DNA of 64,000 nucleotides from Heteronotia binoei (GCF_032191835.1 NC_083226.1:73160001-73224000), one strand, 5' to 3'; positions 7,487-36,423 are shown, counted from the stretch's first letter. The notes: generated by a model from the sequence alone, not told the origin. Numbers and translations: made by a program.

Positions 7487-7789
<303 letters not shown>

Positions 7790-14269: not shown

Positions 14270-14346
14270 GGTTTTCCTCCAGGGATTCCAGCCAGATTTG
14301 GGGGGATGCCAGGTACTCTCATATGAGGAGGAGGGTCAAATCCAAC
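14270..14346 (-). CDS. TLE1: TLE1 exon 14-equivalent (VGFDPPPHMRVPGIPPNLAGIPGGKP)
   Basis: 77 nt; acceptor ttttcag, donor CC|gtaagt. Not in the ORF track; read by hand. Confidence 0.95.
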
Positions 14347-17300
14347 CTGAAAATGAACAGATGAATACATCTTGTGATTCAGGAAGAAGCCCTGCTCTGC
14401 ACAGCTTCCCTCACTGGCCATATTAATATAAATGTACATACAAAGTACTGTTCAAAAACCAGTTTAAGATACGATGCTGTCTTAAACCATCTATTTATGT
14501 TCATATATACAGAATTATATTATTCATTAGTGTACATTTAACATCTTGCTTTAAAAGCCAGTTAAAATGAACTGCAAGTTCTACTAAAATGTAAAGATGC
14601 ACCATTCTTTTGTGGTAGACAGATCTTGAGTAGAAGATACAGATGCATATATGATATTCTACATGGAGTGCAGGAGCAGAAGGTGATACAAAAGCCCATA
14701 GATGAATCTCTTGCTCAAACCATATAAAGGTTAAGCACTAGGTAAAAGAGTGACAAACATGTGAGTAAAGAGTTTTCAGGCACAATCCACCTAAAGGGTC
14801 TCTACCTAAGAGCCATGGAAATAAAGGAACATCAGTCCTGCACTCTGACAATCCAGTTTGTTTCACTAGATTGTGCCAAACATTAAAAGTGCTGTTCCCT
14901 CCCTTTAAAAATGTTACACTTGAAAATTAAAGGTCAGAGCATTCTGCCTGACAAAAATTTATGGCACAGATTACTCTCTTGTTCTAATGAAGATTATTCA
15001 TTTGTCCATACAAAGAATTTTTAATAACAATATTATATTATGTAAGTAACAGGGCACTTACCTGTCACTGTTGTTCATCCACGATCTTCTGTGCAGGCAC
15101 ACAGGAGGACTGTGCATGAGTAGACCTGCTGCAGAGAGATTTTACAAACTAAAGCCTCCAGGAGGGACTGAGCTTTAGAGCTGGAAGAGGCCATATTCTG
15201 CCCAGATGGTCATGTGCTCCAGGGCTCCATCATCCCCCAACACCCCAGTCCTATAGTGCTGCCGAAGCCAAGAAAGAGAGCATGCAGCAGGGCTGGAAGG
15301 AAGGTATGTGTGCCTGAACAGAATATCCTTGATGAACAACAGTTACAGGTAAGTGCAACCCTGTTTTCATCATTGATCTTCTGTGCAGTCCCACATGGGG
15401 ATTCTAACAAGCTATTCACCACAGGTGGGTAATGCTCTTGTCAGTTGAACAACAATTGGAGAACCATCTTGCCAACTTGAACTTCTGTCTTGCAGATCCA
15501 ATGCATGGTGGCACACAATGGTGTCAGCTAATGACCAAGGTTTAGCACAACAGATTTCTGACAGCAGAACTCCATCCAGGAACAGAGCACAAGAAATCAT
15601 TGGTCTGGTGGAATGGGCATGGACTCCCAAGGGACAGGAAATTTGGCCTGGCCTGGACATAGGAAACCTTGATTGTAGACGCAATCCACCTGGACATTTA
15701 GGACAAAAACCTCTTACCCCTATTAGGGCCAGAAAAACATACAAATAGTACCTTGTCTCTCCTAAAACTAGGGGTCCTTTTAAAATAAAGCAATAAAACT
15801 CTTCTCACATAAAGCATATGTAAGGCCCTTTCATTTCCAAATCCGGTGATGGAAAGAACATCAGCAGAATGATCTCTTGAGAAAAATGAAACAGAGACCA
15901 CTTTGGGTAGAAACTGAATGCTAGGCCTAAGAACCACCTTTCCGGAAAACACTAGTAGGAAACGTGGGTCCACCCATAGATTAGCTGACTCACTGACCCT
16001 CCTAGTGGAGTGATGACCTCCAGAAAACAATCCTTCATAGACAATGGTTCAAAAGACTTGAACATTAACTGAGACAAAACGACAGAAAGGGACCACTGAG
16101 GTACCATAGGGTTCCATGGAGAGTACAAATTAAAAAGATACTTCAGAAACCTTTTAGACAAATGGTGTGAAAAGGCTGACTTCCCTTCTTCTCCCATGTG
16201 ATAACAGGAAAAAGCCTCCAAGTGTGACTTCAGGGAAGAGTGAGCCAATCCATTAGATTTAAGGGAAAGCAGGAACTCAAATATGAATTGCAGCAATCCC
16301 CAAGCAAGCAGAATCTTTATATTTGTACCACTCAAAGAAGTGCTTCCATTTAGAGAGTTTATGAGAATTAGGAGAATCTCATTAACCTGTTGGGAAAAAT
16401 CAGACCTTGATTTGGAGCCTCCAAGCAGCTAACTTGAGGCATGCAACGTTGTGGTGAAATACCTGCCCTATGCTGGTTCATCTGGAAACAGGTGATACTG
16501 AACCTTGGCCATGTCCTTGAGGACCAAGAATCCAATCTGTAATGACCAAAATGGAACCATGTATCATGTTTATACCTTCTCTCCTGTATTCTCTCTAGAA
16601 CCATGATTAGCAGCAGGAAATGCAGGAATGCACAGAACAAGGCCCTTATCCATGGAATCTGAAAAGCGTCTCCTATCGACAGAGCTATCAACCTCAATCA
16701 GGCATGCCAACATATGATGACTAAACTTGCCATTGCTCTAGCTGCAGAATCTGCAAGACTAACCATACTAATTGGTTGCTTTAACAACTTGACAGCCTCA
16801 GTTTGAAACAGATTAATGAGGGATCTTTTATCTTCCAGCAGCGCTCTAGATTGGGGAGAATACTGTCCCACAAGAAAAGTTGGTAACCAGCCATAATGGG
16901 TAGTGGGCCACCCTGAGGCCAAGACTTGCAGAGGAATAGATCTTGTGGCCAATTATATCCAACTTTCTGCCTTTCCAGTCAGTAGGGGCAGCATGGTACA
17001 ATTATCAGCCCTTGGGTTGCATTTTCTCCATCACTAAATAGGCAGGAGACAGGTGCATAGTTAAATAAGCGAGAGTCCTGTTTTATTCTGTCGAAGTTTT
17101 TGACTCTCCTTGATGTAGCCTGGAGAGATGCACGTTTTTACCATAACTCCTGTGTTAAATTGAGTGAGCCTTCCAATATGGGAAAGGCAATAACACCCAG
17201 TGATTCTGCGTAAAGATGCCCCAAAAGCTTGTCCCTTGGTTTATGGTCAAATATGGCTACACCAGTCTTATGAGACTGAGCCATTCTGACCATTTATTCT

Positions 17301-18538
17301 CCATACATGCAAGATTTTTAGTGAGGGGTGCAGAGACAAGATCTCCCACCTGTTCATCGGGGCTAGGGTCAGGTGTAGGGTCCAAGTCAGCCTTTGAACC
17401 AACAGTTCTATTCTCACCATCCTCTTCATCTGACACCAGAATTGGTGAAAGGGGTCTTCTAGAAATTGTGGCCAATGGATGCAATGGGACCTTATATTGT
17501 GAAGCTCAGTATCAACTAAGGTCTGACCTGGATCCAGGGATATAGCCATTAGCCCATTCAGCTAAGTATGCAAGTGACATCAGATGGGGTAGGGATGTGG
17601 TGGCCAAGGTACAATCGCTGGAAGCTGGGACCACAAAATCACTTGACTGGGCTTAGATTTGGAAACATCTGGAACTGAAACAGGCACCTGGTTCCCTTCA
17701 ATCTTTCTTTCAGAAATTGACACAGGGTGACGCTGGCCTGGGAGATGGTATCTTTGGAGGAGGCAAAAAGATAGGTTGCTTACCTGTAACTGATGATCTT
17801 TGAGTGGTCATCTGTGCATTTACACTCATGGGATAGAGTGTCCGTGCTGATCCCTGAATCGGTACCCAAAAAGCCCGGGATTTTTCACACTCAGCACCCA
17901 GTGAGCATGCGCACGAGCCCCAGCATACATGCTCACCCGGGCCGGTGCAAGGATCCTGCCAGTTCCTTCCTGACCGCTGGAAGCCCCTAAAATAGGGAGA
18001 CCGTCAGCAGTGGGGAAGGAGGGCAGGTAGTGTGAATGCACAGATGACCACTCGAAGATCATCAGTTACAGGTAAGCAACCTGTCTATCTTCTTTGCGGT
18101 CTCTGTGCTTCACACTCATGGGAGATTAGCAAGCCAGACATACCTGGAGGCGGGAGCAGACAGTCAACCAGAAGAGACAGCTTGCAGCACCACAGCTCCC
18201 AAACAAGTCCTCTGCTGGGTACGCACATCCAGGGTGTAATGCTTCATGAAAGCATGGGGAGAGGACCAGGTGGCAGCCTTGCAAACGTCCATCAAGGAGA
18301 CACCTTTCAGGAACGCCACTGACGTTGCCATAGCCCTAGTAGAGTGCCCATGGATGGACCCAGGCAACGGCTTCTTTGCCAGCAGGTAACGCAGTTTAAT
18401 AGTTTCAGTAAGCCACTTCGAAAGCCTCTGAGATGAGATTCTGGAAACTAATCGGGGAGCAGCATAGGACACAAAGAGATGCGGATCCTGACGAAAGCCC
18501 TTAGAGCGGCTCAGGTAGAACAGTAACGCACGCTTAAC

Positions 18539-20401
18539 TAGGGATGTCCAAAAAACCTAATTCGGTAGTACACGGATTCGGAAATATATTTTTTTTGGGG
18601 GGGGAATACGGAATCCCGTATATTTCTGAATTCTGTAGTCGGAATAGCCGCATATATGGTAGATGCACAGCTATTTCCGAATATACGGCCCCATTATACC
18701 CTATGGGCCATTGAAATCAATGGCAAATAGGGTATATTTGAAGCCGCCTGGAGAGGAGGGGGTTTGAGGGAGAGCCCCCAAATTTGCAGGGGACCTGCAG
18801 GGAACTCTCCCCTACAAACCCCCCAAGTCCCAAAAAGATTGGGCCAGGGGGTCCAATTCCTGGGGCACCCAAAGCCAAACCTAACTTCACACCAGAGAAT
18901 CTCTATAGGACCCAAATGCACTATATACATCTATCTACTTTATGAACCCTGCCACACAAAACACAATCTGCTCAAGGGGCTGCAGCAAACCCAGATGCCA
19001 GCTCTCCAGCCCTGCCCCAAACAACACAGGGAGAGCTGGCCAAGCACAACAAGCCTGCTGGTTCTGGGTCTCTCACCCAGGTGCCAGCTTCCCTGCCACA
19101 GAACACACAATCTACAGTTGCCAGCTCTCCAGCCCTGCCCCAAACAACACGGGGAGAGCTGGCCAAGCACAACAAGCCTGCTGGTTCTGGGTCTCTCACC
19201 CAGGTGCCAGCTCCCCCCCCTCAAAAAAAAAAACAGAACCAGGAAAAGGGACAACGGGAGAAGGCCAAGAAACTCAACTGTTAAAAAAGTGGCCTTTTAA
19301 ACAATGAAAATTAGGCCAAAAAGCACCCCCCCCCCAAGAACCAGAACCAGAAGAGAAAAGGAACAACAGCAGCACAACACAGCCACAAATCAAACACAGA
19401 ATCCTTTTAAAACAGTAAAAGATGTAACTTTTAACAATACAGGAACTTTGCCAACCCCCCCCCCCCAAAAAAAAACCCTTTCACCCTAATCCCAAGAAAT
19501 CCAAGCCACCCAAATCAGGAAAAGTAAAAGGACACTGCACTTTTAAAAGTCCTCTCACTAAAGTAAGATATGGGCAAATTGGCAAACTCCACCCCCCCAC
19601 CCCAGGCCCCCTTCCCCAGCAGAACCCCCTAACCCTAACCCCAAATAAGCTATTACCCACCACCCAAATCTGGATAAGTAAAGGGACTCTGCGTCTTAAA
19701 AAGTCCTTTTACCAACTAAAATAAAAACAAGAACCCCAAGACTGTCTTATCTTAGACGTCTTCTCTACTCCAGGCAAGTCTGGTAAGGCTGAGAGAGAGC
19801 AGCAGCAGCTGAGGCCAAGGGCCAGCATAGCACAATCTCTCTCACACACCAACACAGCAGCAATGGAGGAGTCCAGCGAGGCAGACTCCTTAAAAAGGTT
19901 ATCTGGCCTTACAGAGAGCAGTTTCAAAAAATAGCACTGCTCTGTGATTGGCCAGACAACAGTGCTTACTTGGATACCCAATTAAGCAAAAGATCAAAAG
20001 AACAACAATGTTGCTGATGGCTGGGGGATCACCTACACAACAGCCCTGCAAAGCATGCATTTGCAATGCATTTTGCAAATGCATGCTTTGGATTGGCTGC
20101 TGGGGCTCCTCTCCCCCCCTCCCCCCCCCCCCTCCCTGATCCCAGGGAGGCTATGGGAGAGGCAGGAAAAGGTGGGAAAGGAGGCAAGCAGCTCCCCTGA
20201 GGCTGCAGAAGCCCCTTTCCCACCTTTTTGCATTGAATTCCGTATACTTCCGAATATCTACATGGAAGTATATGGGGAGCCATACTCTGGTCCCGCATAA
20301 TGGGCCCCAATTGGATTCGGCTGTATGCGATTTCGTATACAGCCGAATAAGGGGTGATTCGGCGGTTGATTTCGTTCAGCTGAACCGAATGCACACCCCT
20401 A
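18539..20401. mobile_element. 1.86-kb non-autonomous hAT-like element
   Basis: TIRs TAGGGATGTCCA and TGCACACCCCTA; subterminal TTCGG/CCGAA repeats; degenerate TSD CGCTTAAC/TGCTTAAA. The YR reading frame rejoins across it. Confidence 0.8.
18996..19215. repeat. Direct duplication, about 123-bp period, inside the hAT element
   Basis: tgccagctctccagccctgccccaaacaacac...cccaggtgccagct occurs at 18996 and 19119. Confidence 0.9.
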
Positions 20402-21019
20402 TGCTTAAAATGAAGGTGTGCAGTCGGCGCTCCTCGTCCGAGGTAGGCATAGAGTAAAACATAGGCAGCCAAACTTTCAACTTAAGGTGAAACTGGGAAA
20501 CCACCTGAGGGAAAAACGAAACATCGGGAGCCAAAAATACTCCTGACTCATGAAAAACCAAGTACAGGTGGTCACAACGCATAGCGATGAGTTCCCCCAC
20601 CCGGCGTGCTGACGTGATTGCCACCAAAAATGCAGTTTTCCAAGACAGGAGTTGCAGGGAACAGGTTGCCATCGGTTCAAAAGGGTGCCTGGTCAACCTA
20701 TCCAAAACTAATGGCAAATCCCACAACTGTGGGGATGATCTAGTCAGAGGGTACAACCTGAGAAGTCCCTTCAGGAATTGCTTCGAGCAAGGATGGGCAA
20801 ACACTGAATGCCCCTCAACCGAATCATGTTGAGCTGATATAGCTGATAAATAAACTTTCACTGAAGAAATGGAAAGGCCAGCATCAACAAGAGACAAAAG
20901 AAAATCAAAAATCACAGGTAAGCCGACCTGTTGGGGTGAGACTGCAGTATCAGCCAAAAAACGTACAAATTTCCCACACTTCCTGTCATAGGAGATTTGG
21001 GTAGACAACTTCCTACTGT

Positions 21020-22519
21020 TCAGAAAAATGTGGTGGACCCTATTCGAAAATCCGCAGGATCAATGAACCATGCCGTCAACTTTAAGTGAGGTATGTTGTG
21101 ATGAAACACTTGACCTTCCTGGGCCGAAAGGAGGTCTGGCTCCACTGGGAAATGATGAAAAATTCCCCGCACTAATTGGAGCAAGATTAGAAACCAATTT
21201 TGTTGAGGCCACCACGGCGTGATTAGTATGCACCTCGGTTCCTCTTGCTTTATTTTGCTGACTACCCTTGTCAGCAGCGAAAGGGGCGGGAACAGGTAAA
21301 GGAAAAAACCCCTCCAAGGGAGCAGTACACCGCCCCCCAAGGAAGCCGGGTCCATCCCCCCGGGTGCAAAACAAGGGACACTTCCGATTCAGGGCTGTGG
21401 CGAAAACATCGATCTGGGGATACCCCCACAGCCGAAACACTGGATGAAGGAAACACCACTGTATCTCCCATTTGTGCGGAGACGTGGCTCCTCTGCTCAA
21501 GGAGTCCACCTGAGGTTTGAGTACCCTGGGGAGATGGGAAGTCTTCACATAGATGCCCTGATTCAAACATTCCAGCCACAGCTCTATCACTAGAGCAGAG
21601 TTTTCAGGAGACTATCCCACCCTGTCTGTTGACATAACACAGGGCTGTAGTATTGTCCCTCAGCACAGTCACAGCCTTTCCTGCTACTAAGGGGCAGAAA
21701 GACCGAAGAGCGAAATGAATCACCAAAAGTTCCAGATAGTTTATATGGCAAAAAGTCAGCTGTAGAGGCCATGGACCCCCCCCCCACACACACACACAGA
21801 GTATCCATGTGAGCACCCCTTCCCCATAGGGATACATCCGTGGTGATCATAACCGTCGTTACTGGCAGATGGAAGGGAGCTCCTTGACAGATGTTGTCTC
21901 TGGAGGTCCACCATTCCAGCGACCGAAGTATCGAGGGTGGAATCTTGAACCTCTTTCGAGGGGAGTCCCGTAGGGGGCAAAACTGTTTGAGAAACCAAAG
22001 TTGAAGCCCTCACATGCAGAGATTCGCGAACAACAACACGTTTGTAGTCGCCACCATCAGTCCCAGCAGCCACTGCAACTGTTGTGCCGTGCCCCATTTC
22101 CTGAGTTGAAAAAGTCGAATGAGGGTTATAATGTCCATTGCCCGCTGCTGGGGCAGAAAGGCAAGATGAAAGTCCGTGTCCAGCAGAGCTCCGATAAATT
22201 GAACTTTCTTTGATGGCAGCAAGTGAGACTTTTTTGTGCTTACCTGCAGACCTAGGGTATGGAGAAGGCGGAGAGTTGTAGCAATATGGCAGGGCAGACG
22301 ATCTTTTGAATCTGCCACAAGGAGCCAATCGTCTATGTACGGGAAGACAACTATGCCTTGAAGCCTGAGGTGTGCTGCTACAACGCTCATCATCTTGGTA
22401 AACACCCGCGGTGCAGTAAAAAGGCCGAATGGGAGGGCTTTGAACTGAAAGTGGTTGGAGCCTATCACAAACCTAAGAAACTGCCTGCAAGATGGATGGA
22501 TGCTGACATGGAAGTAGGC
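21020..22519 (-). pseudogene. DIRS-B pol remnant: RT C-terminal half, RNase H and N6-adenine methyltransferase-like (MT) domain
   Basis: AYFHVSI..FQFKALPFGLFTAPRVFTK..YIDDWLL (RT); RDNTTALCYVNRQGG (RH); IDVFAT and LYLFPP..ILITPWWPQQNWF (MT). Frameshifted. Confidence 0.88.
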
Positions 22520-22580
22520 ATAAGACATAAGAGAAGCCATGTTGGATAAGGCCAATGGCCCATCCAGTTCACCACTCTGT

Positions 22581-22744
22581 NNNNNNNNNNNNNNNNNNNN
22601 NNNNNNNNNNNNNNNNNNNNNNNNNNNNNNNNNNNNNNNNNNNNNNNNNNNNNNNNNNNNNNNNNNNNNNNNNNNNNNNNNNNNNNNNNNNNNNNNNNNN
22701 NNNNNNNNNNNNNNNNNNNNNNNNNNNNNNNNNNNNNNNNNNNN
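22581..22744. other. Assembly gap (164 N) within the CR1 3' region
   Basis: Run of N; both flanks are collinear with the CR1 copy at 12055. Confidence 0.99.
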
Positions 22745-25500
22745 CTGATGGACTTCTGCTCCATATTTTTATCTAACCACCTCTTGAAGCTGGCTATGCT
22801 TGTAACCGCCACCACCTCCTGTGGCAGTGAATTCCACATGTTAATCACACTTTGGATGAAGAAGTGCCTCCCTTTATCCGTTTTAACCCGACTGCTCAGC
22901 AATTTCATCGAATGCCCACGAGTTCTTGTATTGTGAGAAAGGGAGAAAAGTACTTCTTTCTCTACCTTCTCCATCCCATGCATTATCTTGTAAACCTATA
23001 TCATGTCACCTCGCAGTCGACGTTTCTCCAAGCTAAAGAGCCCCAAGCGTTTTAACCTTTCTTCATATGGAAAGTGTTCCAATCCTTTAATCATTCTAGT
23101 TGCCCTTTTCTGGACTTTTTCCAATGCTATAATATCCTTTTTGAGGTGCGGTGACCAGAATTGTACACAGTATTCCAAATGAGACCGCACAATCAATTTA
23201 TACAGGGGCATTATGATACTGGCTGATTTGTTTTCAATTCCCTTCCTAATAATTCCCAGCATGGCGTTGACCTTTTTTATTGCAATTGCACACTGTCTTG
23301 ACATTTTCAGTGAGTTATCTGCCACGGCCCCAAGATCTCTCTCTTGGTCAGTCTCTGCTTGGTTCCAATGTGCATTACTTTGCACTTGGCCACATTGAAC
23401 CTCATCTGCCACATTGACGTCCACTCACACAGCCTCAACAGATCCCTTTGGAGTGCCTCACAAGTCTCTCTGGTTCTCACCACCCTGAACAATTTAGTGT
23501 CATCTGCAAACTTGGCCACTTCACTGCTTACTTCCAACTCCAGATTATTTATGAACAAGTTAAAGAGCATGGGACCCAGTGCTTAACCCTGTGGCACCCC
23601 ACTGCTTACCATCCTCCACTGCAAAGACTGCCCATTTATACTCACTCTCTGCTTCCTATTAATTAGCCAGTTTTTGATCCACAAGAGGACCTGTCCTTTT
23701 ACTCCATGACTCTTGAGCTTATTAAGGAGCCTTTGATAAGGAACTTTATCAAAAGCTTTCTGGAAGTCAAGGTAAACAACATCTATTGGGTCTCCTTTGT
23801 CCACATGTTTGTTCACCCCCTCAAAGAAATGCAACAGGTTAGTGAGGCAAGATCTTTCCTTACAGAACCCATGCTGAGTCTTCCTCAATAACTTGTGTTC
23901 ATCAATGTGCCTACTCATTCTGTCCTTGATAATGGTTTCTACCAACTTTCCCGGTATTGAAGTCAGACTGACTGGCCTGTAATTTCCCGGATCTCCTCTG
24001 GAACCCTTTTTAAAGATGGGGGTGACGTTTGCTACCTTCCAGTCCTCAGGAATGGAGGCAGATTTCAATGAAAGATTACATTTTTTTGTCAGAAGATCCA
24101 CAAGTTCAACTTTGAGTTATTCCAGAACTCTTGGATATATGCTATCCGGACCTGGTGACTTATTAGTTTTTAATTCGTCTATCAGTTGTGGAACCTCCTC
24201 TCTTGTCACCTCAGTCTGACTCAGGTCTTTCAAAAACCCCTCCAAAATAAGTGGTTCTGGAGCAGGCACACACTTCTAATCTTCCACTGTGAAGACGGAG
24301 GCAAAAAATGCATTCAGCTTCTCAGCCATTTCCCTATGCTCATTCAGTAATCCTTTTATCCCTTGGTCATCCAAGGGCCCCTGGCCCCTGCCTCCCTGGC
24401 TGGTTTCCTGCTTCTAATATATTTGAAGAAATTTTTATTATTGGTCTTTATGTTTTTTGCAATATGCTTCTCATAGTCCCTTTTTGCCTGCCTGATTACA
24501 GTCTTGCATTTGATTTGCCACAGCCTGTGTTCCCTTTTATTAATCTCACTGGGACTAGCTTTCCACTGCTTAAATGAGTCCTTCTTACCTTTTACAGCTT
24601 CCATTACTTTGTTTGTTAACCATGCAGGCCTTTTCTTATACCTGTTTGTGCCTTTCCTAACTTGTGGTATATATTTTATCTGAGCTTCTAGGATTGTAGT
24701 TTTAAATAGCCTCCAAACTGTATTTATCTTTCCTTTCAGTTTCCTCTTCACATGCCTCCTCATCTCAGAGAATTTACCCCTTTTAAAGTTAAACGTGGTT
24801 GTGCTTGTCTTTTGGGACAACTCCTTATTTATACAAATGCTGAAATCAGTAACATTATTGTCACTGCTCCCAAGTGGTTCGATCACTTTTACATCTCTCA
24901 CCCAGTCTTGGGCATTACTTAGGACCAAATCCAGGATCGCCCTACCCCTGGTAGGTTCTGTGACCATCTGCTCCACAGCACCGTCATTTAGAGCATCTAG
25001 AAACTCAATCTCTTTCTCTCGACCAGAACACATATTAACCCAATCAATCTGCGGGTGGTTAAAATAACCTATTATGACACAATTTTTACGTTTAGCCACT
25101 ATCTTTTATCCCTCCATCATATTATAATCATTCTCTATCTTTTGATTTGGTGGACGATAACGAACTCCCATAGATAAATTTCCTTTTGGGCCCTCTGTTT
25201 CAACCCAAAGCATTTCTAGAAGGGAATCTAATTATCTGACCTCAGTCTTACTGGACTGTTTACCCTCTCTGACATACAGAGCCATTCCACCTCCAACCCT
25301 TCCCTCCCTATCCTTCTGATATAACTTATATCCAGGAATCACCGTGTCCCACTGATTCTCCTCATTCCACCAAGTTTCTGAAATTCCCATAATGTCTATG
25401 TTTTCTCCCAACACTAAACATTCCAAGTCACCAATTTTACTTCAAACATTTCTAGCATTTGAATACAAACATATATAATTTCCCAGGCAAGCTAGGCCCG
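22745..25500 (-). pseudogene. CR1 ORF2 (APE endonuclease plus RT), disrupted
   Basis: IMGISETWW, LDLVL, YRPVSLTS, YLDFQKAFDKV, FADD motifs; stops, frameshifts and small deletions. Confidence 0.9.
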
Positions 25501-25739
25501 CAACCTTCCTCCTGCCCCCTCGAGACTTTGGCAGACAGTCCATACTGTTGTCACCATCTCAGTGAACAACTCTGATCCATTACCTGGTAGAAAAATAACA
25601 GCTAACCCTTAATCTCTTTGAGATGAGTCCTCCTGAACCAGAGACATTTCATCTCCTGTTGGCTTTCCCTCAAGATTTAGTTTAAAAACTGCTCTGTCAC
25701 CTTTTTGATTTTAAGCGCCAGCAGCCTGATTCCATCTGG

Positions 25740-26590
25740 GGACCGTCTTTTTTGTATAGCTCCCGCTTGTTCCAGAAAGCATCCCAGTGCCTAACAAACT
25801 TAAACTCTTCCTCCTTACACCATCGTCTCATCTACATATTGAGACTTCTAATTTGTGCCTGTCTCTCCAGCCCTGCACGTGGAACAGGTAGCACTTCTGA
25901 GAAGGCTACCTTGGAGGTCCTAGCCTTAAGTCTCCCACCTAGCAGCCTAAATTTTTCCTCCAGGACCTCACGACTGCATTTCCCCACATTGTTGGTGCCA
26001 ACATGCACCATGACCACTGGCTCCTCCCCAGCACTGTCTATCAGCCTATCTACTACATGTGTAATGTCCGCTACCTTCGCACCAGGCAGGCAGGTCACCA
26101 TACGGTCAGCATGAGGTTTTGCCACCCAGCTGTCTACTTGCCTAAGGATCGAATCACCAACTACCAAGATCCCCCCTCTTTCCCTGCCCAGGGATGGTTC
26201 CTTGGCGCAAAAGGATACCCGCTCACCAACTGAAGAAGAGGTCCCTTCTGAGGGAGCATTCCCCTTATCCTCAGCACGGTGCCGTGTTCCCTCTTGACCC
26301 TCATGCTCCCTGGCAGCAACAGGGCTGCCAAGTTCAGAGTGGGGCTCATCTAATACATCCCCGAGAGCCTTCTCCGAGTGCTTAACTGACTGTCTCTGCT
26401 TCTCCAGGTCAGTCACCTCAACCTCAAGGGTACGAACTCGTTCCATGAAAACCAGGAGCTCCTTGCATCGAGAACACACCCAAGACTTCTGTCCTGTGGG
26501 CAGATAGTCATACATGTGACACTCAGTGCAAAACACTGGAAAGCCCCCACCTCCCTGCTGGCATTCTACCTTCATGATAGCTTTTTTCAA
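25740..26590 (-). pseudogene. CR1 ORF1 (C4 zinc finger plus SGNH esterase-like domain), premature stop
   Basis: FCTECHMY..VCSRCKEL; VVGDSILR, CLPGAKV and VHVGTNN blocks. Confidence 0.88.
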
Positions 26591-27264
26591 AAATATACAA
26601 TCCCCTTTTAAATCCTGTTTGTTTATACAGTCCCCTTTTAAATCCTGTTGACCTTCTGGAGGGTTAACTTACCTTATTGGGAGCACAAGGAAATTAGGGA
26701 TCTGGGTTCCTGGTCCTTACAGAGCCCCCTGGCCAAGAGCCCTTTAGCTCTCGCCCTTCGGCTCGCACCAAAGGCTCGCACCTCTGGCAAGGCGCAGCTT
26801 AATAATGCAAAGAGGGTGGGGAACACAGCCACTCCTAATCAATCAGCAACAATCACCTTCAATCACCTTCACCTTCAGCCCACTCAAACCAAACAGACAG
26901 CAGTTCCCCAGCAACCACAAACTCAGAATTTTCAGCAGTCACACAAACTCAGAAACTCTCAGCCATTTCCCCAGCTGCTTAGCCAAACCTCACCCTTATA
27001 TCACTTATTCTCTGCTCTCTCTCAGAGCTCTTTGAAATGTCTTTCAGGTCCAAGGTCGCCATCCAGTCTCCTTGGCAGATAAGGGGAAGGATTGTCTGTA
27101 GAGTGGACATCTGAAATTTCTGATACACGATAAACTTGTTTAAATTTCAGAGGTCCATAACTGGTCTCAGTCCACCATCCCGTTTGGGAACCAGAAAATA
27201 ATGAGAATAGAACCCCGCCCCCCCCCCCCCCATCCTGACTGCTGAGGGGACCGGTTCTATGGCT

Positions 27265-27316
27265 TGTTGGACTGGATGGGCCATTGGCCTGATTCAGCAT
27301 GGCTTCTCTTATGTTC
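27265..27316 (+). mobile_element. 52-bp CR1 3' terminus, inverted relative to the adjacent CR1
   Basis: tgttggactggatgggccattggcctgattcagcatggcttctcttatgttc is the reverse complement of the CR1 tail seen at 12062-12114. Confidence 0.88.
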
Positions 27317-27663
27317 CCCGATAAGGAGATCTACTCTCACTCTGTGATGCACGAGGTCTCCAGGATTGGTCAGGGGAATATTCCTGATAAGGTCTCTTAA
27401 GCCAGGGCTTATGCCACTGCTTAGACTTTCCAGCCTGAGAAGAGGCAGGTACGCCGAGATTCCGTGAGGTTTTAATACTTTTGTCCATTTCCTGTAGGGT
27501 GGCCAGACCGTCCCGGTCACCCGGGAATGTCCCACTTCTGGGTCCTAATTCCCGCCTCCCGACCTGCCTATACCGGGACCATTACAAGTCCCGGTTTAGC
27601 CAGCGAGAGGAGCCGGGCATGGGCGGGGCCAGGAAGCGGGGGGAGGCTGCGCTGCTGCTGCCT

Positions 27664-27732
27664 CTTCTCCGTAGCTGCTCCTCTGAGATGGGCTCAGCCT
27701 GAGCCCATCTCGGAGGAGCAGCTGCGGAGAAG
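27664..27732. repeat. 69-bp near-perfect hairpin (34-bp arms)
   Basis: cttctccgtagctgctcctctgagatgggctcag-c-ctgagcccatctcggaggagcagctgcggagaag; 2 mismatches, both T:G. Confidence 0.92.
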
Positions 27733-28092
27733 CGTGGCAAGCCCCGAATCTGGGTCCTTCTAGGACCCTGAGCAGCAATGCTGGAGGAGCAGGAGCAGGC
27801 CGGACTTGCGCCCCGCCCCTCCACTCCCTGCAGGGGCAAAGGCGGCATGCGTGGGCCTGCTTCACTTCTCCGCCCGGCCCCTCTGCTGTGCGGGCGGCAA
27901 GGGACATGCTGGGCCGGCCTCGGAGGAGAAGGAGGCGGCCGGAGGAGGAGGAGGCGGCATGGCTGCGGCGGAGGCGCGCTGGCCTTCCGAGCCAAGGACT
28001 TGGTAAGTCCGGGGGTGATGCGGAAGGTGGGAGGGGAGCTGTGCTGCGCTGGTAGCCGAGGGAGAGGCCCTCCTCGCCTTCCCTGCTGGCCC

Positions 28093-28883
28093 TAGGCTTC
28101 CCAACCCCCAACCCCCTTCATCCCCCGGTGGGTCTCCAGAAATCAGGAAGCGGGGTGGGGGTGGGGGCTGGAGGGGGGGAGAACATACCTGTAGGTGTAG
28201 CAGTTTGTAAAATGCCTGCCCCTTTAAGGCTGGCCTGGGCAGGAAGGAGGAAACAGGAAGGGCTTCGGAGAACGGCCCCTCCCTTTCTTTGCTTTCGTTT
28301 TCACAGCAGGCAGAGGGAAGAAGACCAAGTGCGGTAGGTGTTTGTGTGTGTGAGAGAGAGGGAGGGGGCCCGGGGCAAGGAGGGGTGATTCCTTGGTATG
28401 GAGGCCCTTCCCCCCCTTTAGAAAGCGTGTGTGTGTGGGGGGGGGAGGGAAATGTCTACTAGGCACTCTATTATTCCCTATGGAGAACAATTCCCATAGG
28501 GAATAATGGGGGATTGATCCGTGGGTATTGGGGGCTCTGGGGGGGCTATTTTTTGAGGTAGAGGCACCAAATTTTTAGTATAGCATCTAGTGCCTCTCCC
28601 CAAAATACCCCCCAAGTTTCAAAACGATTGGACCAGAGGGTCCAATTCTATGAGCCCCAAAAATGGTGCCCCTATCCTTAATTATTTCCTATGGAAGAAA
28701 GGCATTTTAAAAGGTGAGCTGTCCCTTTAAATGTGATGGCCAGAACTCCCTTGGAGTTCAGTTATGCTTGTCACATCCTTGTTCTTGGCTCCACCCCCAA
28801 TGTCTCCTGGTTCCACCCCCAAAGTCTCCTGGCTCTGCCCCCAAAGTCCCCAGATTTTTCTTCAATTGGACTTGGCAACCCTA
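28093..28883 (+). mobile_element. Blackjack-like hAT MITE nested in the 5-kb element
   Basis: Same family as 11228-11886; perfect TSD GCTGGCCC. Confidence 0.9.
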
Positions 28884-29850
28884 GCTGGCCCGGCCTCCAC
28901 AGGGTTTAAACTGGCACTGATATGAACTTTGGAACTGTACTCAGATCAGCTATGATGCCTAGAAACTACCTCTGTGTGCTTGCTGTGTAATAGCACTCAG
29001 GATAGTCCTCTTCAAGCTTCAACATCCAAATTTCCAGGAATTTCCAACCCAGAGTTGGTAACCCTAGCTCTATCACAGATTTAGGAGGTCTTTGATTGCT
29101 GATTTAGGAGGTCTTTGATTGCTGGGGAGGGGGTCAGTAGTAGGAAGTACCCATACAGGGAGCACATACATTGAAGGTGGAGGTATTGTGACTCAATTCA
29201 CACCCTACATTTTTTATAAACATGGCACTTAGGTATGCATTTTGCAGGGACAAATGTAGTCATATTCTAATATGTTAAATGTGCCTATTTGCAGTGTTTG
29301 GTTTAGCATTCCTTGTTAACTGAACTTTCCAGCACTTATGGTAGATGCATTTCTCTGATGCATAAAATACATATATGTTAGACAATAATTTACATGGAAT
29401 TTCCATCTCATTATAAAACATTGGGTGTAATTTTGCATAACTAAAGGTAATGGATTGGGCATGCAATAAAAATCCCAGTTTTATTTGATCATTACTTAAG
29501 TCCTTTCTTTCATATTTGCATAGTGGCATGATAAGAGTTATAATTTGCTTTGTTTTAATTTAGTGTCAATAAAATTGATTCAGACATCTGTTTCCAAAAC
29601 AGAAAAAAGTGTTGTTTTTCCAACATGAATTTTTAAAGTAAAAGATTGCCTGCTTCTTTTAAATTTTGCCCCAGAGGTTTTACTTTAAGAGCATATTCCT
29701 ACAGCTGCAAACCTGGTAGAAATTTGCAAAGTCCCATCCACTCCAATTATCTAATTAACATTGACCAGAGTTTTAATATTGCTGCTTGGTAATTCCATTG
29801 GCCATTCCATCTAAGAATTGTACACAAATTTTAAGTCAGCAGCCAATATG

Positions 29851-30115
29851 GTATTCCTGCAGCACAGATTAGTAAAGCTGCAGTACTACAGTCCAAGCCC
29901 TCTGTTCACGACCTGAGTTTGATCCTGGCGGAAGCTGGGTTCAAGTAGCCAGCTCAAGGTTGGCTCAGCCTTCCATCCTTCCGAGGTCGGTAAAATGAGT
30001 ACTTTCTGGGGGGAAAGTGTAGATGACTGGGGAAGGCAGTGGCAAACCACCCCGTAAAAAGTCTGCCATGAAAAACATTGTGATGTGATGTCACCACAGA
30101 GTCAGAAATTACTGT
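29851..30115 (+). mobile_element. Sauria-type SINE (Squam1-like)
   Basis: ggtaaagctg...cagccttccatccttccgaggtcggtaaaatgagtac...ggggaaggcagtggcaaaccacc blocks recalled as typical of Sauria SINE. Confidence 0.75.
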
Positions 30116-30799
30116 TTTGGAGAATTTGTACCAGTATACCATTAACGTACTACAGTAGCAATTTCTGAAGGTGTGTAAAGCGGAACTAAATTTATTGTGC
30201 TTGGAGCATGAGTAGATGGAAAAATTCAGTTGAAAAAAGGAGGCAAATAACAAGGAACATGTTCAGATACTTGATAGCTCACTATAGGAGCAAGGGAAGA
30301 CATGTACTGAAAGTATATATAATACTGAAATCTGTTGGTTATCTTACAGAATGCAACTAATGGACATGTAGTTTTACTACTTGTGATTGTGGCTTTGGAA
30401 TTACTGTCTAGAAAGCTCCATTAAGTTCTGTATGGTCAGTAACAATAATAAAGTTAAGCACTTTAAAATTAAGCATTGATGCATGCCATTTAAGACCATG
30501 CTTAACTATTTAATTGAAGTTAATAGGACTGAAGTGTTTAGCTCTGGCTAGATTGTGCAAATATATCAGTGTCTTTGCAAATGTTAAAATGCTTCCCAGC
30601 TATGGATCTCTTGATTAAGGGTATGCAAACCCCCTCCCCCCATATTTCTTGGTTCAGGTCTATAGGATTAAAAAAAATCCAGTATTTCTGAAAAATCCCA
30701 GATCCCAGTATCGGTATGGTATTTGGATCCTGGATTCTTCAGAAATCCCAATTTTTTCTGGGTCCAATAGACCCAAGAAGAAAAATATCTGTAGTTTTA

Positions 30800-31121
30800 A
30801 AAAAACCCGCCCTGACTCTGGGGCTTCTCCTTGCAGCATGGTTTAAATTGTGCTTAAAGAAAAACTGGCCCCAGGATCTGCTTGTGGCAAGGAAGGAGAT
30901 CACTCCTTGCTGCACACTGACTTGGCTGGGAGTGCTTCTCCTGGAGAAGCTATCGCCAGGATCCTTCCTTCCTTCCTTCCTTCCTTCCTTCCTTCCTTCC
31001 TTCCTTCCTTCCTTCCTTCCTTCCGTGGCTCTCAAATATCCGATGTTCATGTCTTGCGGCTCTCAAACATCTGACCTTTATTCTGTGTTGCTCTTTTGTT
31101 AAGCAACTCTGGCCACCCCTG
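30800..31121. mobile_element. Partial hAT MITE end
   Basis: Ends in TGGCCACCCCTG, preceded by tgcggctctcaaacatctga subterminal repeats. Other end not found. Confidence 0.45.
30962..31024. repeat. (CCTT)n microsatellite, about 15 units
   Basis: Direct reading. Confidence 0.98.
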
Positions 31122-31269
31122 GAGTAGACAATACTGACTTTGGTGGACCCAAGCACTGATTCAGTGTAAGGGAGCTTTGTGTTTGTGTCTTCTGGTGCTT
31201 TCAGACATACCACCCAAATCCTTTCAGCAAAGGCCAGATAGGAGTTATGGGCAGTGTTTGCCTGCAGTG

Positions 31270-32176
31270 CAATTTTGTTCTCAAATCCTGTATTTACTTC
31301 ATCAGTATATGGGATAAGGCACTTTCTCAACTGTGCTGCATAATGCAGCCTATTTATTTTGTCCTGTTTGCTCTGTTGGCTCTATCTGTGCCACCTTCAT
31401 CACTTTCGGGGTGTGGATCCCCCAGTGGGGTGGTCTCCCGACTCCCTCCGCCGGCTGTTTCTGATAGCCCTGCGCCCCCTCTTTCATTTGATATGTGTCC
31501 CGTGCGGATGCCACCCTCCCGCCGGGAGATGCCGCAAAATGAGCCCCCTTGAGGCTTATGGCGGCAGGGCTTGGGGGAAGCGAGCTAGACTGCTGTTCTT
31601 TTGAGGGGTCATAGAGTGTTTCGAGCCCGTCCCTGTGGCATCGGTCCCATCGTTGTGGGGCCCAGGGGGCCGGCGCAGCGGCATGCTGAAGCAGCCTGTC
31701 GGTCACTTCCGGGTTCCTGTCCTGCATCTCGACCTGTGTTATTAGTGACAGGCTGCTTCGGCGTGCTGCTGCGCCGGCCCCCTGGGTCCCACAACGATGG
31801 GACCGATGCCACAGGGACGGGCTCGAAACACTCTATGACCCCTCAAAAGAACAGCAGTCTAGCTCGCTTCCCCCGAGCCCTGCCGCCATAAGCCTCAAGG
31901 GGGCTCATTTTGCGGCATCTCCCGGCGGGAGGGTGGTACCCGCACGGGACACATATCAAATGAAAGAGGGGCGCAGGGCTATCAGAAACAGCCGGCGGAG
32001 GGAGTCGGGAGCCCACCCCACTGGGGGATCCACACCCCGAAAGTGATGAAGGTGGCGCAGATAGAGCCAACAGAGCAAACAGGACAAAATAAATAGGCTG
32101 CATTATGCAGCACAGTTGAGAAAGTGCCTTATCCCATATACTGATGAAGTATATACAGGATTTGAGAGCAAAATTG
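31270..32176. repeat. 907-bp palindrome: about 431-bp arms, about 46-bp spacer
   Basis: 31270-31700 versus the reverse complement of 31747-32176: 12 differences counted by eye (about 97%). Confidence 0.97.
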
Positions 32177-32208
32177 TTTCCGGCGGTGATATTTGGGGGA
32201 TTTTTGGG

Positions 32209-32485
32209 GACGTCACAGGAAGTGCTGTGAAGTCACTTCCTGTTTCCGGCAGTGGCATTTGGGGGAAATGATGTCATTTGGGGGAAGTGATGTCACAGGA
32301 AGTGATGTCACTTCCTGCTTCCGGCAGGTGGCGCAGGGGGGGAAATGATGTCACAGGAAGTGATGTCACTTCCTGTTTCCGGCAGGTGGCGCGGGGGGGG
32401 GAATGATGTCACAGGAAGTGATGCCACTTCCTTTTCCCGGCGGTGGCATGACATCACCGGAAGTGACGTCACTTCCTGTTTCCGG
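32209..32485. promoter_or_regulatory. Subterminal tandem array (about 5 units of 55-60 bp) of GGAAGTGAYRTCACTTCC palindromes; last unit is an exact ETS-CRE composite CCGGAAGTGACGTCA
   Basis: Exact motif at 32457-32471; other units mostly carry TGATGTCA, the CpG-deamination product. Regulatory activity not shown. Confidence 0.55.
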
Positions 32486-35400
32486 CGGCGCACGCGCTTC
32501 GCGCGCGCACCCCTACCTTCCCCCTCCCCAAGGTGTCCCTGGCTGGCCTTCAGACATTATGGCCACCCTAATTTCCTGTAAAACACTATCGGTAGTGGAA
32601 CTAAATAGACCTTCGCCCTCAAAGGGAAGGTCTTCCACATAAGCTCTAGTGTCAGGCTGAAGGGCTGTCGAACGCAACCAGGAGTGACGGAGTAACGAAA
32701 TGGCAGAAGTTAGAGTCTTAGCAGAGATGTTCACCATATGTTTTAATGTGGCCAACTGTTGTTTAGCCACAGCAAATCCCTCCCTTTGCAGCGTCTTTAC
32801 GAAAGACCGCTTATCCTCACTCAGAGAGGACAATAAAGGTGTGAGTTGTTCCCAAATCGAGTACTGGTAACGTGCCATGCAGACAGCATAATTAGAGGTT
32901 TTTACTCACAAGGCCCCTGCAGAGTAAAAACGTCTGCCAGCATTGTCGATCATTTTACCCTTTTTATCAGGAGGGGTAGAGTGAGTCTTGTGAGCTTTCA
33001 AAGACGAAGATACCACCACCCAATTAGGCTTGGGGTGGTTGAAAAAAACTCAGCACCAGCTTCTTGGACACGATACATGTGGTCTAAACATTGCAAAGAG
33101 ATCGGTGTAGATGCCGGCTTTGCCCATGGTTCCTTCACTGCTTGCAGAATGACCTTGGTACCTGGGAGAGCCACAGCTGTTGACGTGTCCTGCTGCATGA
33201 TGTCAAAAACAGTATCATTGATGACCGGTTGTGGCTGCACCATGGAGAGCGAGAGAGATTGTGCCATACGCTTCACTAGGATCCCATACAACTTGAGATC
33301 CTCTGAGGGAGATATTGGAAGGTCATCTGCAATGTGAAAGTCCGGAGAAGGTTCAGCCTATGCCTTGTCCAGATCATCGGTACTGACTGTGGAATCTATT
33401 GAAGACTCCTCTCTCATCTTAGAGCGTTCCAATAGCTGCAGAGTCAAGGCATGCTCGGGTGGGCAAATCAATGCCAACAGGTGAATTTGTGAGTCCCCAG
33501 ACCTCTCCTTATGCCTTTCCGGGGGAATCGCTATTGATGATGAGGATATATGATGGACTGGCAAATGATGAGAGACCCTCGAGAAGTGGGAAACTTCCGA
33601 GCCAGTCCCAGTCCAGTGGATCTTGGGGGAAGGGGTACCACAGGTATGGCGAAGGATATGGATAAGCTCCAAATGAGCAAGGCCACTGACACTGGTCCCA
33701 CACCTGTGGAGAGAGGCACTTGACTCAATCTCTCTACTCTGAAGATGTCCCGTGCTGGAACGAAGTGGTGCTAGGGGGTTGGTCGGCACCAAAACCTCAG
33801 TCTCCGACACCGAACCACTGGCACAAACCAGACCAATGGGAAAGAGTTTGCTGGGTCAAGTTGATCTTCTGCTCCAACCCCAAAAGATGGGTTGGTTGTG
33901 ACCCAAGCCTGCCCAACACCAATGGACTTCTTCAGCAGCTGGGTGACACAAGGATTTTCTGTGGTGGAGCAGTTTGTGCCAATGCCAAGTCTCTAGAAGC
34001 ATCCCTATAAGGAGAAGGAGTGTGGGAAAGTCTATCCTGCTTCTTGCGCTTGTCCTTCGATTTATGCTTCTTCAGGAGGGACGACCAGGACCCCAAGTCG
34101 TCTCAATGCTTCTTTGTCGGGGTAGACTCCATCGATACTTCAGAGGGTCGCTTTGTAGGCTGATCCTGATCAGTCAGCATAACAGCCGACACTTGAGACA
34201 ACAGGCCCATTGAGGCTGAGGCTGTGGATTGGGTTGCATCACCCATTGATTTCGAAGGGCCCGATGCCATTTTAGGCGGTAGAAGAGCCGATTCAGCTAA
34301 AGCTGCCGATAGCCTGGCCGCTCGATTTTTCGTTTGTTTGGAAGATTTCAAGCAATGTGGACACGAGTCAACACAGTGTCCCTCACCCAGGCACAACAAG
34401 CAGAGGGAGTGTCTGTTTGGGGGAGCAATCTTACTTTCGCACTTCAGGCACTGCTTAAAGAACCCCCAACGTTTTTCCATAGGCAGTGGGAACGGTGACA
34501 AGGGAGAGGGAAAAAATGCCCCGAAGGGCAAAGTCCAACTAAAAGTCCTTTTTAAAAAAAAAAAAAACAAGAATGGAGAACTAAAAAAATCAACAGGCAA
34601 GAAGAGGAAAAACCGAGAAGAAATGGTAAGTACCGACCGGAGCACTGAAGAAAGATCCTTTCAACGCGGCGCTCAAGAAGGAACTGGTGAGATTCTCGTG
34701 CCAGCCCTGGTGAACATGCGTGCTGGGGCTCCTGCATATGCTCATTGGGTGCTGAGCACGAAAAATCCCAGGCTTTTTAGGTACCGATTCGGGGATCAGC
34801 ACGGGCGCTCTATCGCATGAGTGTGAAGCACAGAGACCACGAAGAAGATCCTCCTGCAGTTCAGCAGTCGGCTTTGGTACTTGCACAGGAGTGTGATGTG
34901 AGGACTCTGATTTGCACTTCTCCTTGAGATTAGTCTTAAGCTTAGGTCTTTTAGTCAGTAGTTCTGAAAAATACCTCTGAACTCAAGGGGACTACCATTC
35001 TAAGTGAACCAGTGGGATCATAGGAAGGAGACCTTGATGATCCCTCCAGAGCCAAATCTGGATTCAGTGGATCTGAAGATTTTAGGGCTTTTATTTTTAT
35101 TTTATTTATTTTATTATATTTATATCCTGCCCTCTTTGCCAAGACAGGCTTTTCCCCAAAGTGTTGCTTTGAGCTTCGATGCCTGATCATCTCTAGCTTT
35201 GGGGGTAAAATGCTGGCAAGCTTTGCAAGCAAATACGTTATGCCTCTTGTCCAAACTGAACAAAGCCTGCGCTCTTCAGTCTGAGTCATCTTGGCATCAT
35301 AACGGGTGCATTTTTTCAAATCAAAGCACTGAGCCATGATGGTTCAGAGAAAGATCGCCACCAGCCAGAGACGGAGAAGAGAGGGCGAGACAGCCACTCA

Positions 35401-36232
35401 CAAGAACAACAACAAGGGAGCTACCAGCTCAAACCTTCTCCTTCAGCGGCAAGAAAGAAACTAAGGGTGGGGGCAATGGAGCACCAGAACACATGTCCAT
35501 TTGGGCAGGAATGGTCTCTTCCAATTCCAGTGCTGAGCACCCCCTGGAAGCTTTTGCTTATAAAACCTCTCCATGGCAGGCCTGCTCATGTGCAGTCCCC
35601 CTGCAGTACTGTATAGGAGATTGACAATGAAATTGTATTTATAATGAATGTATTTTGTATCTTTAGTTTAATTATGTACAGTTGGTCTATGAGCATTAAT
35701 AAATGGAATGAAACTAATATCCACAGATCTGATAGTTAAACTGCTCCTCCATTTATACTTATGCTCCCACATTTATGTTTGTAAATTCACACTGTAATTT
35801 GCCTTTATTACAGAGCAGAGGATATATATTGACCAACATTCTCTAATTCAAATGCAAATGAATAAATAAAAGCCTCTTGTCTTACAAGATGAACTTAAAG
35901 TATTCATTAAATATAGGTACTGACATCTTCACAAGAACAAACATAACCCTGTGAAACAATATGTTGCTTTCAAACTACTTTCTTAATGCAAAATAGCTTT
36001 GTGCACTTCAGTGCAGTAAGCAAGGAAGATGCTTACAAAAAAGACAAGACTTACTTCAATATTACACTGGTATCCTTCATTGTCAAGGGGGACAGGTAAC
36101 TAAAACACTGTTATGTAGCAACATGTAGTGGAGCAGTAAAGCCTCCAGCGACAGTACATATTTGAAGTTTGACAATGCTAAATGAAGTATCCAGGTTTCT
36201 CTAAGTGAACCAAGTACACAAAGTAAGCCTAC

Positions 36233-36423
36233 CATAGGAGACCGTCCATAGGCAACCACAGCAGCTGCAGCCGCAGCAGCACTCATCTGCGGGGACATGT
36301 TGTGTAGACTGGCATAGGCTGCACCTGGACTGGTCAGCTCTCCATTCATGCCAGCATGAGGTACCATTCCAAATGGTGCAGGATATGGTCCTGGCACAGC
36401 CAGTGGTGTTCTCAAGCCAGCAG
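36233..36423 (-). CDS. TLE1: TLE1 exon 13-equivalent ([18 protein letters not shown]...AYGRSPM)
   Basis: 191 nt; acceptor ctgcag, donor ATG|gtaggc. Confidence 0.97.

What the first reader, a model, noticed from the sequence alone, without database searches (positions are those of the whole stretch)
14347..36232. Four-level nested transposon stack inflates one TLE1 intron about 17-fold
Seen: the intron is 21,886 nt. Removing DIRS-A (15048-35633) leaves about 1.3 kb. Order inferred from rejoined reading frames and TSDs: DIRS-A, then DIRS-B, then the 1.9-kb hAT, CR1 and 5.1-kb hAT, then MITE 28093-28883. Each layer landed in a previous TE rather than in host intron. Established: Dictyostelium DIRS-1 preferentially inserts into other DIRS-1 copies. 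Inference: a TE sink or safe harbour in a dosage-sensitive developmental gene.
Basis: partly seen in the sequence, partly recalled or inferred. Interest (0 to 1): 0.7.

Follow-up and report, generated by a model that had tools for sequence, protein, structure and literature searches.

The report
Nested transposon pile in TLE1 intron
One intron of a reptile TLE1 gene is 94% jumping-gene DNA, inserted one element inside another to four levels; this is real, but it is what neutral accumulation predicts and does not show a special landing pad.

Summary
The intron (14347-36232, minus strand, GT/AG) is 21,886 nt. A DIRS1-like element (A, 15048-35633) takes up 20,586 nt of it. A second, unrelated DIRS1-like element (B, 17769-34849) sits inside A's gag region. 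B is broken by a 1.9-kb hAT-like element, a full-length CR1-type LINE, a 56-bp LINE-tail fragment and a 5.1-kb hAT-ended element. The 5.1-kb element carries a 791-bp hAT-like MITE.

Corrections:
- The LINE ends at 27038, not 27320. Removing it rejoins B's reverse transcriptase codon to codon.
- The second "tail" (27265-27320) is a separate small insertion.
- The 1.9-kb element splits the recombinase within one residue, but with a 1-nt frame offset.
- A lacks its RT/RNase H, an internal loss of about 2 kb.

The N gap lies at the end of the LINE's ORF2. Short reads cannot bridge it. Four pairs of matching features straddle it, which argues for a correct join.

The "TE sink / safe harbour" reading is not supported. 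With insertions spread uniformly over the intron, all later insertions land in TE DNA 43-51% of the time. This is an ordinary nested TE cluster. Ortholog and long-read tests could not be run. Other notes of this scan cover sub-parts of the same stretch.

The parts
14270..14346 (-). TLE1 exon downstream of the intron (SP-domain end)
   Evidence: Read. Splice donor and acceptor flank it. The neighbouring WD40 exon 7487-7789 matches human TLE1 structure 1GXR at E=3.7e-56.
14347..36232 (-). The intron, 21,886 nt
   Evidence: GT/AG ends read.
14347..15047 (-). Host intron remainder, acceptor side (701 nt)
   Evidence: No repeat match inside the window.
15048..17768 (-). DIRS-A 3' part: right ITR, ICR 15307-15401, recombinase 15475-16284, MT-like end 16412-16673, gag C-terminus 16680-17308. 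RT/RNase H are absent.
17769..34849 (-). DIRS-B with all its inserts (17,081 nt; 5,551 nt of its own sequence)
   Evidence: The ICR halves 18029-18086 and 18087-18123 complement the two tips 17769-17826 and 34813-34849. It is collinear with an intact Sceloporus DIRS, L001.
18539..20401 (.). hAT-like non-autonomous element, 1,863 nt; target duplication 18531-18538 / 20402-20409 (6/8)
   Evidence: Recombinase homologue P0005 residues 13-221 map to 21038-20412 and residues 223-340 to 18538-18185.
20410..22519 (-). DIRS-B recombinase N-part, MT-like, RNase H region and RT C-part
   Evidence: Pfam RVT_1 E=9e-17 on 22013-22519. Phage_int_SAM_1 E=1.4e-3. 48 vertebrate recombinase homologues.
22520..27038 (-). 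Full-length CR1-type LINE (ORF1, endonuclease, RT, 3' tail), 4,519 nt as assembled
   Evidence: Pfam RVT_1 and Exo_endo_phos_2. Limits are set by the Sceloporus pol alignment, which runs 27263-27039 and then continues at 22519.
22581..22744 (.). Assembly gap (164 N) at the end of the LINE's ORF2 / start of its 3' UTR
   Evidence: Letters were not read or filled.
27039..27263 (-). DIRS-B pol N-part (RT fingers)
   Evidence: 53% identity over 76 columns to Sceloporus pol residues 72-142, E=8e-26.
27265..27320 (+). About 56-nt LINE 3'-tail fragment in opposite orientation: a separate, heavily truncated insertion
   Evidence: 50-nt inverted match to 22525-22574. DIRS homology stops at 27263.
27321..27494 (-). 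Unassigned 174 nt, presumably the DIRS-B gag-pol linker
   Evidence: No detectable homology. It lies between two defined insert ends.
27495..32570 (.). hAT-ended 5,076-nt non-autonomous element; duplication 27487-27494 = 32571-32578 (8/8)
   Evidence: No transposase domain.
28093..28883 (.). hAT-like MITE, 791 nt; duplication 28085-28092 = 28884-28891 (8/8)
   Evidence: Its right end is shared with copies at 11464-11886 and 47099-47553.
32579..34849 (-). DIRS-B gag and left ITR (34669-34849)
   Evidence: tblastx/tblastn to Sceloporus gag, E=2e-37. ITR pair 83% identical.
34850..35633 (-). DIRS-A 5' part: start of gag and left ITR (about 35465-35633)
   Evidence: The ITR pair is 79.6% identical. 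The tip matches the second ICR half at 78%.
35634..36232 (-). Host intron remainder, donor side (599 nt)
36233..36423 (-). TLE1 exon upstream of the intron
   Evidence: Read; open frame.

Best explanation
This is an ordinary nested transposon cluster built by successive independent insertions. None of them needs targeting or selection in its favour.

1. A DIRS1-like retroelement (A) integrated into a 1.3-kb intron, about 600-700 nt from either splice site. Either it already lacked RT/RNase H or it lost them later.
2. A second DIRS1-like element of a different family (B, full length, about 5.55 kb) integrated into A's gag.
3. B was then hit by a hAT-like element, a full-length CR1-type LINE, a tiny LINE-tail fragment and a 5.1-kb hAT-ended element. 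That last element holds a hAT-like MITE.

After the first hit most of the intron was dead TE DNA. Later hits therefore fell there by target size, and were tolerated because they touch no splice signal.

Shown: the anatomy, the ends and the containment order. Inferred: neutrality and timing.
For: - Ends and duplications of every DNA element are.
- The DIRS termini are fixed by the ICR halves.
- B is collinear with an intact Sceloporus DIRS across all three breaks.
- The RT rejoins codon to codon at 27039|22519.
- The recombinase is split between residues 221 and 223.
- A and B are different families. Their ITRs share only a 39-nt stretch at 77%, and their recombinases are about 40% identical.
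- A is more decayed than B.
- The uniform-target null gives P=0.43-0.51 for every later insertion landing in TE.
- Other introns of the same gene in the window also carry LINE and MITE copies directly in host DNA: 12062-13274, 11464-11886 and 52200-54579.
Against: All four mid-level insertions lie in B's own 5.55 kb. None lies in A, in host DNA or in another insert. This has P=0.011-0.032 under the same null, but the statistic was chosen after seeing the data.

All three retroelements are in the sense orientation of TLE1, which is usually the less tolerated one.

Contiguity over the gap is inferred, not read. The ancestral intron length was not checked in any outgroup.
Confidence: 0.85

Rival explanations
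1. Targeted nesting. The DIRS recombinase preferentially integrates into resident DIRS DNA, as reported for Dictyostelium DIRS-1. Alternatively the locus acts as a selected 'safe harbour' that draws insertions away from functional intron sequence.
For: B lies inside A. PMC7192593 cites Cappello et al. that many DIRS-1 copies sit in pre-existing DIRS-1. All mid-level inserts lie in B (P=0.01-0.03, post hoc).
Against: There is one DIRS-in-DIRS event, with P=0.73 by target size alone. The target in A's gag does not resemble B's circle junction. The later inserts use three unrelated integration mechanisms, so no single targeting rule can explain them. TEs also lie in host DNA of neighbouring introns.
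Confidence: 0.08
2. Assembly artefact. The scaffold was joined wrongly across the N gap inside a very high-copy LINE tail, so the two halves come from different loci and the intron length is false.
For: Both gap flanks are repeats at about 450-1,300-fold depth in about 1x data. No read or pair bridging was reported. The N length (164) differs from the 54 nt separating the same flanks in the second copy.
Against: Four independent pairs of matching features straddle the gap in the right order and orientation:
- the two TLE1 exons;
- A's ITR pair with its ICR;
- B's ITR pair with its ICR;
- B's RT, split codon to codon by the LINE.
A chimeric join would not reproduce this symmetry.
Confidence: 0.04
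3. The depth of nesting at this locus is three, not four. The MITE entered a copy of the 5.1-kb element elsewhere and came here as part of it.
For: Both have perfect 8/8 duplications, so no relative age can be read. DNA transposons move with whatever lies between their ends.
Against: Nothing. No other copy of the 5.1-kb element was available for comparison.
Confidence: 0.3

Closest known systems
Nested transposon clusters (for example nested retrotransposons between maize genes; Dictyostelium DIRS-1 clusters)
   Same: There are successive insertions into earlier insertions. The order can be read from containment, and the older layers are more decayed.
   Different: The cluster lies within one intron of a conserved vertebrate gene. 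It mixes YR retroelements, a LINE and hAT elements, and it is small (20.6 kb).
DIRS1-like retrotransposons of squamates (Anolis: 775 sequences in 42 families, PMC3266345)
   Same: Both have inverted terminal repeats and two adjoining ICRs complementary to both tips. The gene order is gag, RT, RNase H, MT-like, tyrosine recombinase. There is no target duplication.
   Different: Copy A lacks RT/RNase H. Both copies are decayed. The 3-bp junction rule could not be read.
Non-autonomous hAT elements and hAT MITEs
   Same: They share 8-bp target duplications and short inverted ends starting with the hAT-type pentamer.
   Different: No transposase remnant is present. The 5.1-kb element carries unrelated GC-rich DNA, a 907-nt palindrome and a 58-nt tandem array.
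CR1/L2-clade LINEs of reptiles
   Same: It has an AP-type endonuclease, an RT and a short repeated 3' tail. Most copies are heavily 5'-truncated, like the 56-nt fragment.
   Different: This copy is full length. The clade was not tested by phylogeny.

Membership tests
DIRS1-like (YR retrotransposon) | Inverted terminal repeats | tested here: met
   The A pair is 79.6% identical over 137 nt and the B pair 83.2% over 184 nt.
DIRS1-like (YR retrotransposon) | Two adjoining ICRs complementary to the outer tips of both ITRs | tested here: met
   B is 95% and 92% complementary, A 91% and 78%. The definition comes from PMC3266345.
DIRS1-like (YR retrotransposon) | Reverse transcriptase | tested here: met
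   B: Pfam RVT_1, E=9e-17. A: absent through an internal loss of about 2 kb.
DIRS1-like (YR retrotransposon) | Tyrosine recombinase in place of an integrase | tested here: met
   Pfam hits are below cut-off: SAM-like E=1.4e-3 and catalytic E=0.13. There are 48 homologues, some named Tyr recombinase or core-binding domain proteins. Alignment covers the full protein length in both A and B.
DIRS1-like (YR retrotransposon) | RNase H and MT-like domain | tested here: inconclusive
   There is no Pfam hit. The region is collinear with the Sceloporus pol at 31-52% identity.
DIRS1-like (YR retrotransposon) | No target-site duplication; shared 3-bp junction | tested here: inconclusive
   No duplication flanks A or B. 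The trinucleotide could not be assigned because the tips carry small indels.
hAT superfamily | 8-bp target-site duplication | tested here: met
   The three elements score 6/8, 8/8 and 8/8.
hAT superfamily | Short terminal inverted repeats of hAT type | tested here: met
   The three elements score 9/11, 11/11 and 10/13 (same calls).
hAT superfamily | hAT transposase with dimerisation domain | tested here: not met
   No Pfam domain is found in any internal ORF, so the elements are non-autonomous at best. The superfamily is assigned from the ends only.
CR1-type LINE | AP endonuclease plus RT | tested here: met
   RVT_1 E=1e-19 and Exo_endo_phos_2 E=2e-4.
CR1-type LINE | Placement in the CR1 clade rather than L2 or another clade | not tested
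No phylogeny was run.
TLE1 (Groucho co-repressor) | TLE WD40 domain and SP-region exons in order | tested here: met
   Exon 7487-7789 matches human TLE1 chain 1GXR at E=3.7e-56, against 1e-8 for TLE6. The paralogue call (TLE1 rather than TLE4) rests on my memory of the human protein. The joined exon model was not searched.

The most novel reading that the evidence does not exclude
Squamate DIRS1-like recombinases home into resident DIRS DNA as in Dictyostelium. DIRS copies in introns would then seed growing TE nests that shield host sequence from further hits.
Probability: 0.07. Interest if true: 0.45.

Novelty: already known. Interest (0 to 1): 0.12.

Why it matters
It matters little beyond annotation. 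It documents precisely how one intron of a conserved developmental gene grew 17-fold, and it gives clean breakpoints for six TE copies. It also shows that the 'TE lands in TE' pattern needs no special mechanism. The only wider question is whether vertebrate DIRS elements prefer DIRS targets, and that needs a genome-wide count, not this locus.

Tried and rejected
Its 0 hits mean nothing for the element.

2. My reading by eye of 27321-27494 as the RT N-terminus was wrong. The Sceloporus alignment puts that part at 27039-27263.

3. Short reads (three runs of one sample, about 1x each) gave depth 0.2-1.3 on unique DIRS-B bins, so the copy is present. They gave only repeat noise at the gap flanks and no bridging information. 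The loose-end letters printed there come from other copies and were not used to fill the gap.

4. Mapping A's gag across the B insertion failed. Only weak, non-collinear hits were found, so 'rejoined frame' for B in A stays untested.

Exons were read from ORF listings instead.

7. No target duplication was found for the 907-nt palindrome.

8. No tool here holds vertebrate genomes, so the orthologous empty site could not be examined.

Full report
GENE AND INTRON. The gene runs on the minus strand. The exon at 14270-14346 and the exon at 36233-36423 are separated by an intron with a consensus donor and acceptor at 36231-36232 and 14347-14348. That gives 21,886 nt as stated. A WD40 exon further down (7487-7789) matches the solved human TLE1 domain at E=3.7e-56. 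The other exons seen in ORF listings follow the TLE1 order as I remember the human protein. Other introns of the gene inside the window measure about 1 to 6.5 kb. The one upstream of about 44 kb appears to run past the window end, although short exons under 45 codons were not screened there.

THE GAP FIRST. The only N run is 22581-22744.
- Both flanks belong to the 3' end of one LINE copy.
- They are collinear, in the same order and strand, with a second copy of that LINE family at 12062-13239. There the matching flanks lie 54 nt apart. I did not read or use those letters.
- By position in the second copy, the gap covers the last codons of ORF2 and the start of the 3' UTR. 'In frame' therefore has no bearing on the nest.
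- Short reads from three runs of one sample were laid on 17200-23190. Unique DIRS-B bins have depth 0.2-1.3 per direction, which fits a single-copy locus at about 1x. The gap flanks reach about 450-1,300, so nothing can be said about bridging.
- Continuity rests on four pairs of matching features that straddle the gap in the right order: the two exons, A's ITRs and ICR, B's ITRs and ICR, and B's reverse transcriptase, split at one codon boundary.

THE TWO DIRS ELEMENTS. Repeat finding and pairwise alignment show the DIRS1 signature described in PMC3266345. That signature is inverted terminal repeats plus two adjoining internal complementary regions that pair with both outer tips.
- For B, 18029-18086 pairs with 17769-17826 (95%) and 18087-18123 pairs with 34813-34849 (92%). 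This fixes the ends at 17769 and 34849.
- For A, 15307-15365 pairs with 15048-15103 (91%) and 15370-15401 pairs with the tip near 35630 (78%). This fixes 15048 and 35633 to within about 2 nt.
- Both elements have the ICR at the low-coordinate end, so both are on the minus strand, the sense strand of TLE1.
- A recombinase ORF of B found 48 vertebrate homologues, several named Tyr recombinase or core-binding proteins.
- From one of them (Sceloporus, P0005) I fetched an intact DIRS locus, L001. Its gag, pol and recombinase map collinearly onto B, from 34851 down to 18185, with three clean breaks.
- B's own sequence adds up to 5,551 nt, the size of the Sceloporus element.
- A maps only over its recombinase (about 30% identity, against 47-51% for B), the end of the MT-like region and the gag C-terminus. 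These last two abut at about 16675-16680, so RT and RNase H (about 2 kb) are missing.
- A and B are different families. Their ITRs share only a 39-nt stretch at 77%, and their recombinases are about 40% identical. They are therefore two events, not a concatemer.
- B lies in A's gag. Whether A's frame rejoins could not be tested, because A's gag is too decayed.

INSERTS IN B.
(i) hAT-1.9 (18539-20401). It has hAT-type ends (9/11) and an 8-bp duplication with two mismatches. P0005 residues 13-221 end at 20412 and residues 223-340 start at 18538. The break is therefore exact to one residue, but 2 nt rather than 3 remain for residue 222, a 1-nt frame offset.
(ii) LINE (22520-27038). It carries an endonuclease and RT. 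The Sceloporus pol alignment runs to 27039 and resumes at 22519 on consecutive residues. Removing the LINE thus restores the RT frame with no loss and no duplication. The companion note's end at 27320 is 282 nt too far.
(iii) LINE-tail fragment (27265-27320). This 50-56-nt copy of the LINE tail lies in the opposite orientation. DIRS homology stops at 27263, and about 60 or more nt of pol N-terminus are missing there. I read it as a separate, extremely truncated LINE insertion with a small target loss.
(iv) hAT-5.1 (27495-32570). It has 11/11 inverted ends and a perfect 8-bp duplication, and no transposase.
(v) MITE (28093-28883), inside hAT-5.1. It has a perfect 8-bp duplication. Two other copies in the window stop at exactly the same base.

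ORDER AND DEPTH. Containment gives A before B, B before (i)-(iv), and hAT-5.1 before the MITE. That is four TE levels. Decay agrees for A against B. The order among (i)-(iv) is open. The imperfect duplication of hAT-1.9 hints that it is older than hAT-5.1. The MITE may have arrived as a passenger, which would make the local depth three.

INTERPRETATION. Element A covers 94.06% of the intron, a 16.84-fold growth. If each new insertion falls uniformly within the intron as it then stood, B lands in A with P=0.73. All later events land in TE DNA with P=0.43-0.51, depending on order.
- A post hoc oddity remains: all four mid-level inserts hit B's own sequence (P=0.01-0.03). I give it little weight.
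- The inserts use three unrelated integration chemistries, so a common targeting rule is unlikely.
- The Dictyostelium preference for DIRS-into-DIRS is indeed reported (PMC7192593). One event here cannot test it, and B's target in A's gag does not resemble B's circle junction.
- Neighbouring introns carry LINE and MITE copies directly in host DNA.

VERDICT. The anatomy is real and now mapped to the base, with corrections to the LINE limits and one added small insert. The mechanism is ordinary sequential insertion and neutral retention. The safe-harbour reading is not supported. Ortholog comparison and long-read confirmation remain to be done.

Noticed in passing
window 18030-18084: The first ICR half of DIRS-B has read depth of about 60 per direction, while the rest of the element is about 1x. 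Loose ends on both sides are heterogeneous. This 55-nt tip/ICR module is kept at 97% or more in 100 or more otherwise diverged copies, which hints at functional constraint.
   Followed up: partly
window 15048-17768 and 34850-35633: DIRS-A lacks RT and RNase H but keeps gag, the recombinase, the ICR and both ITRs. It may have been a non-autonomous copy moved in trans. PMC7192593 shows that DIRS-1 RT acts in trans.
   Followed up: partly
window 15048-27038: DIRS-A, DIRS-B and the full-length LINE all lie in the sense orientation of TLE1, the orientation usually selected against in introns.
   Followed up: no
window 31270-32176: A 907-nt palindrome with nearly perfect arms (97-98%) lies inside the 5.1-kb element. 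It has no target duplication at its edges.
   Followed up: partly
window 32205-32498: A tandem array of 58-nt units, each itself palindromic, lies next to the right end of the 5.1-kb element.
   Followed up: no
window 18600-20200: The interior of hAT-1.9 reaches depth 100-270 per direction in about 1x data, so it belongs to a high-copy family. It shares a 69-nt stretch with the MITE family.
   Followed up: no
window 52200-54579: Another LINE on the minus strand has a 563-codon open frame and an endonuclease-like ORF. It lies directly in host DNA of an upstream TLE1 intron.
   Followed up: no
L001 2690-8300: The Sceloporus undulatus DIRS copy used as reference has long open gag, pol and recombinase frames, up to 506 codons. 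It may belong to a recently active family.
   Followed up: no
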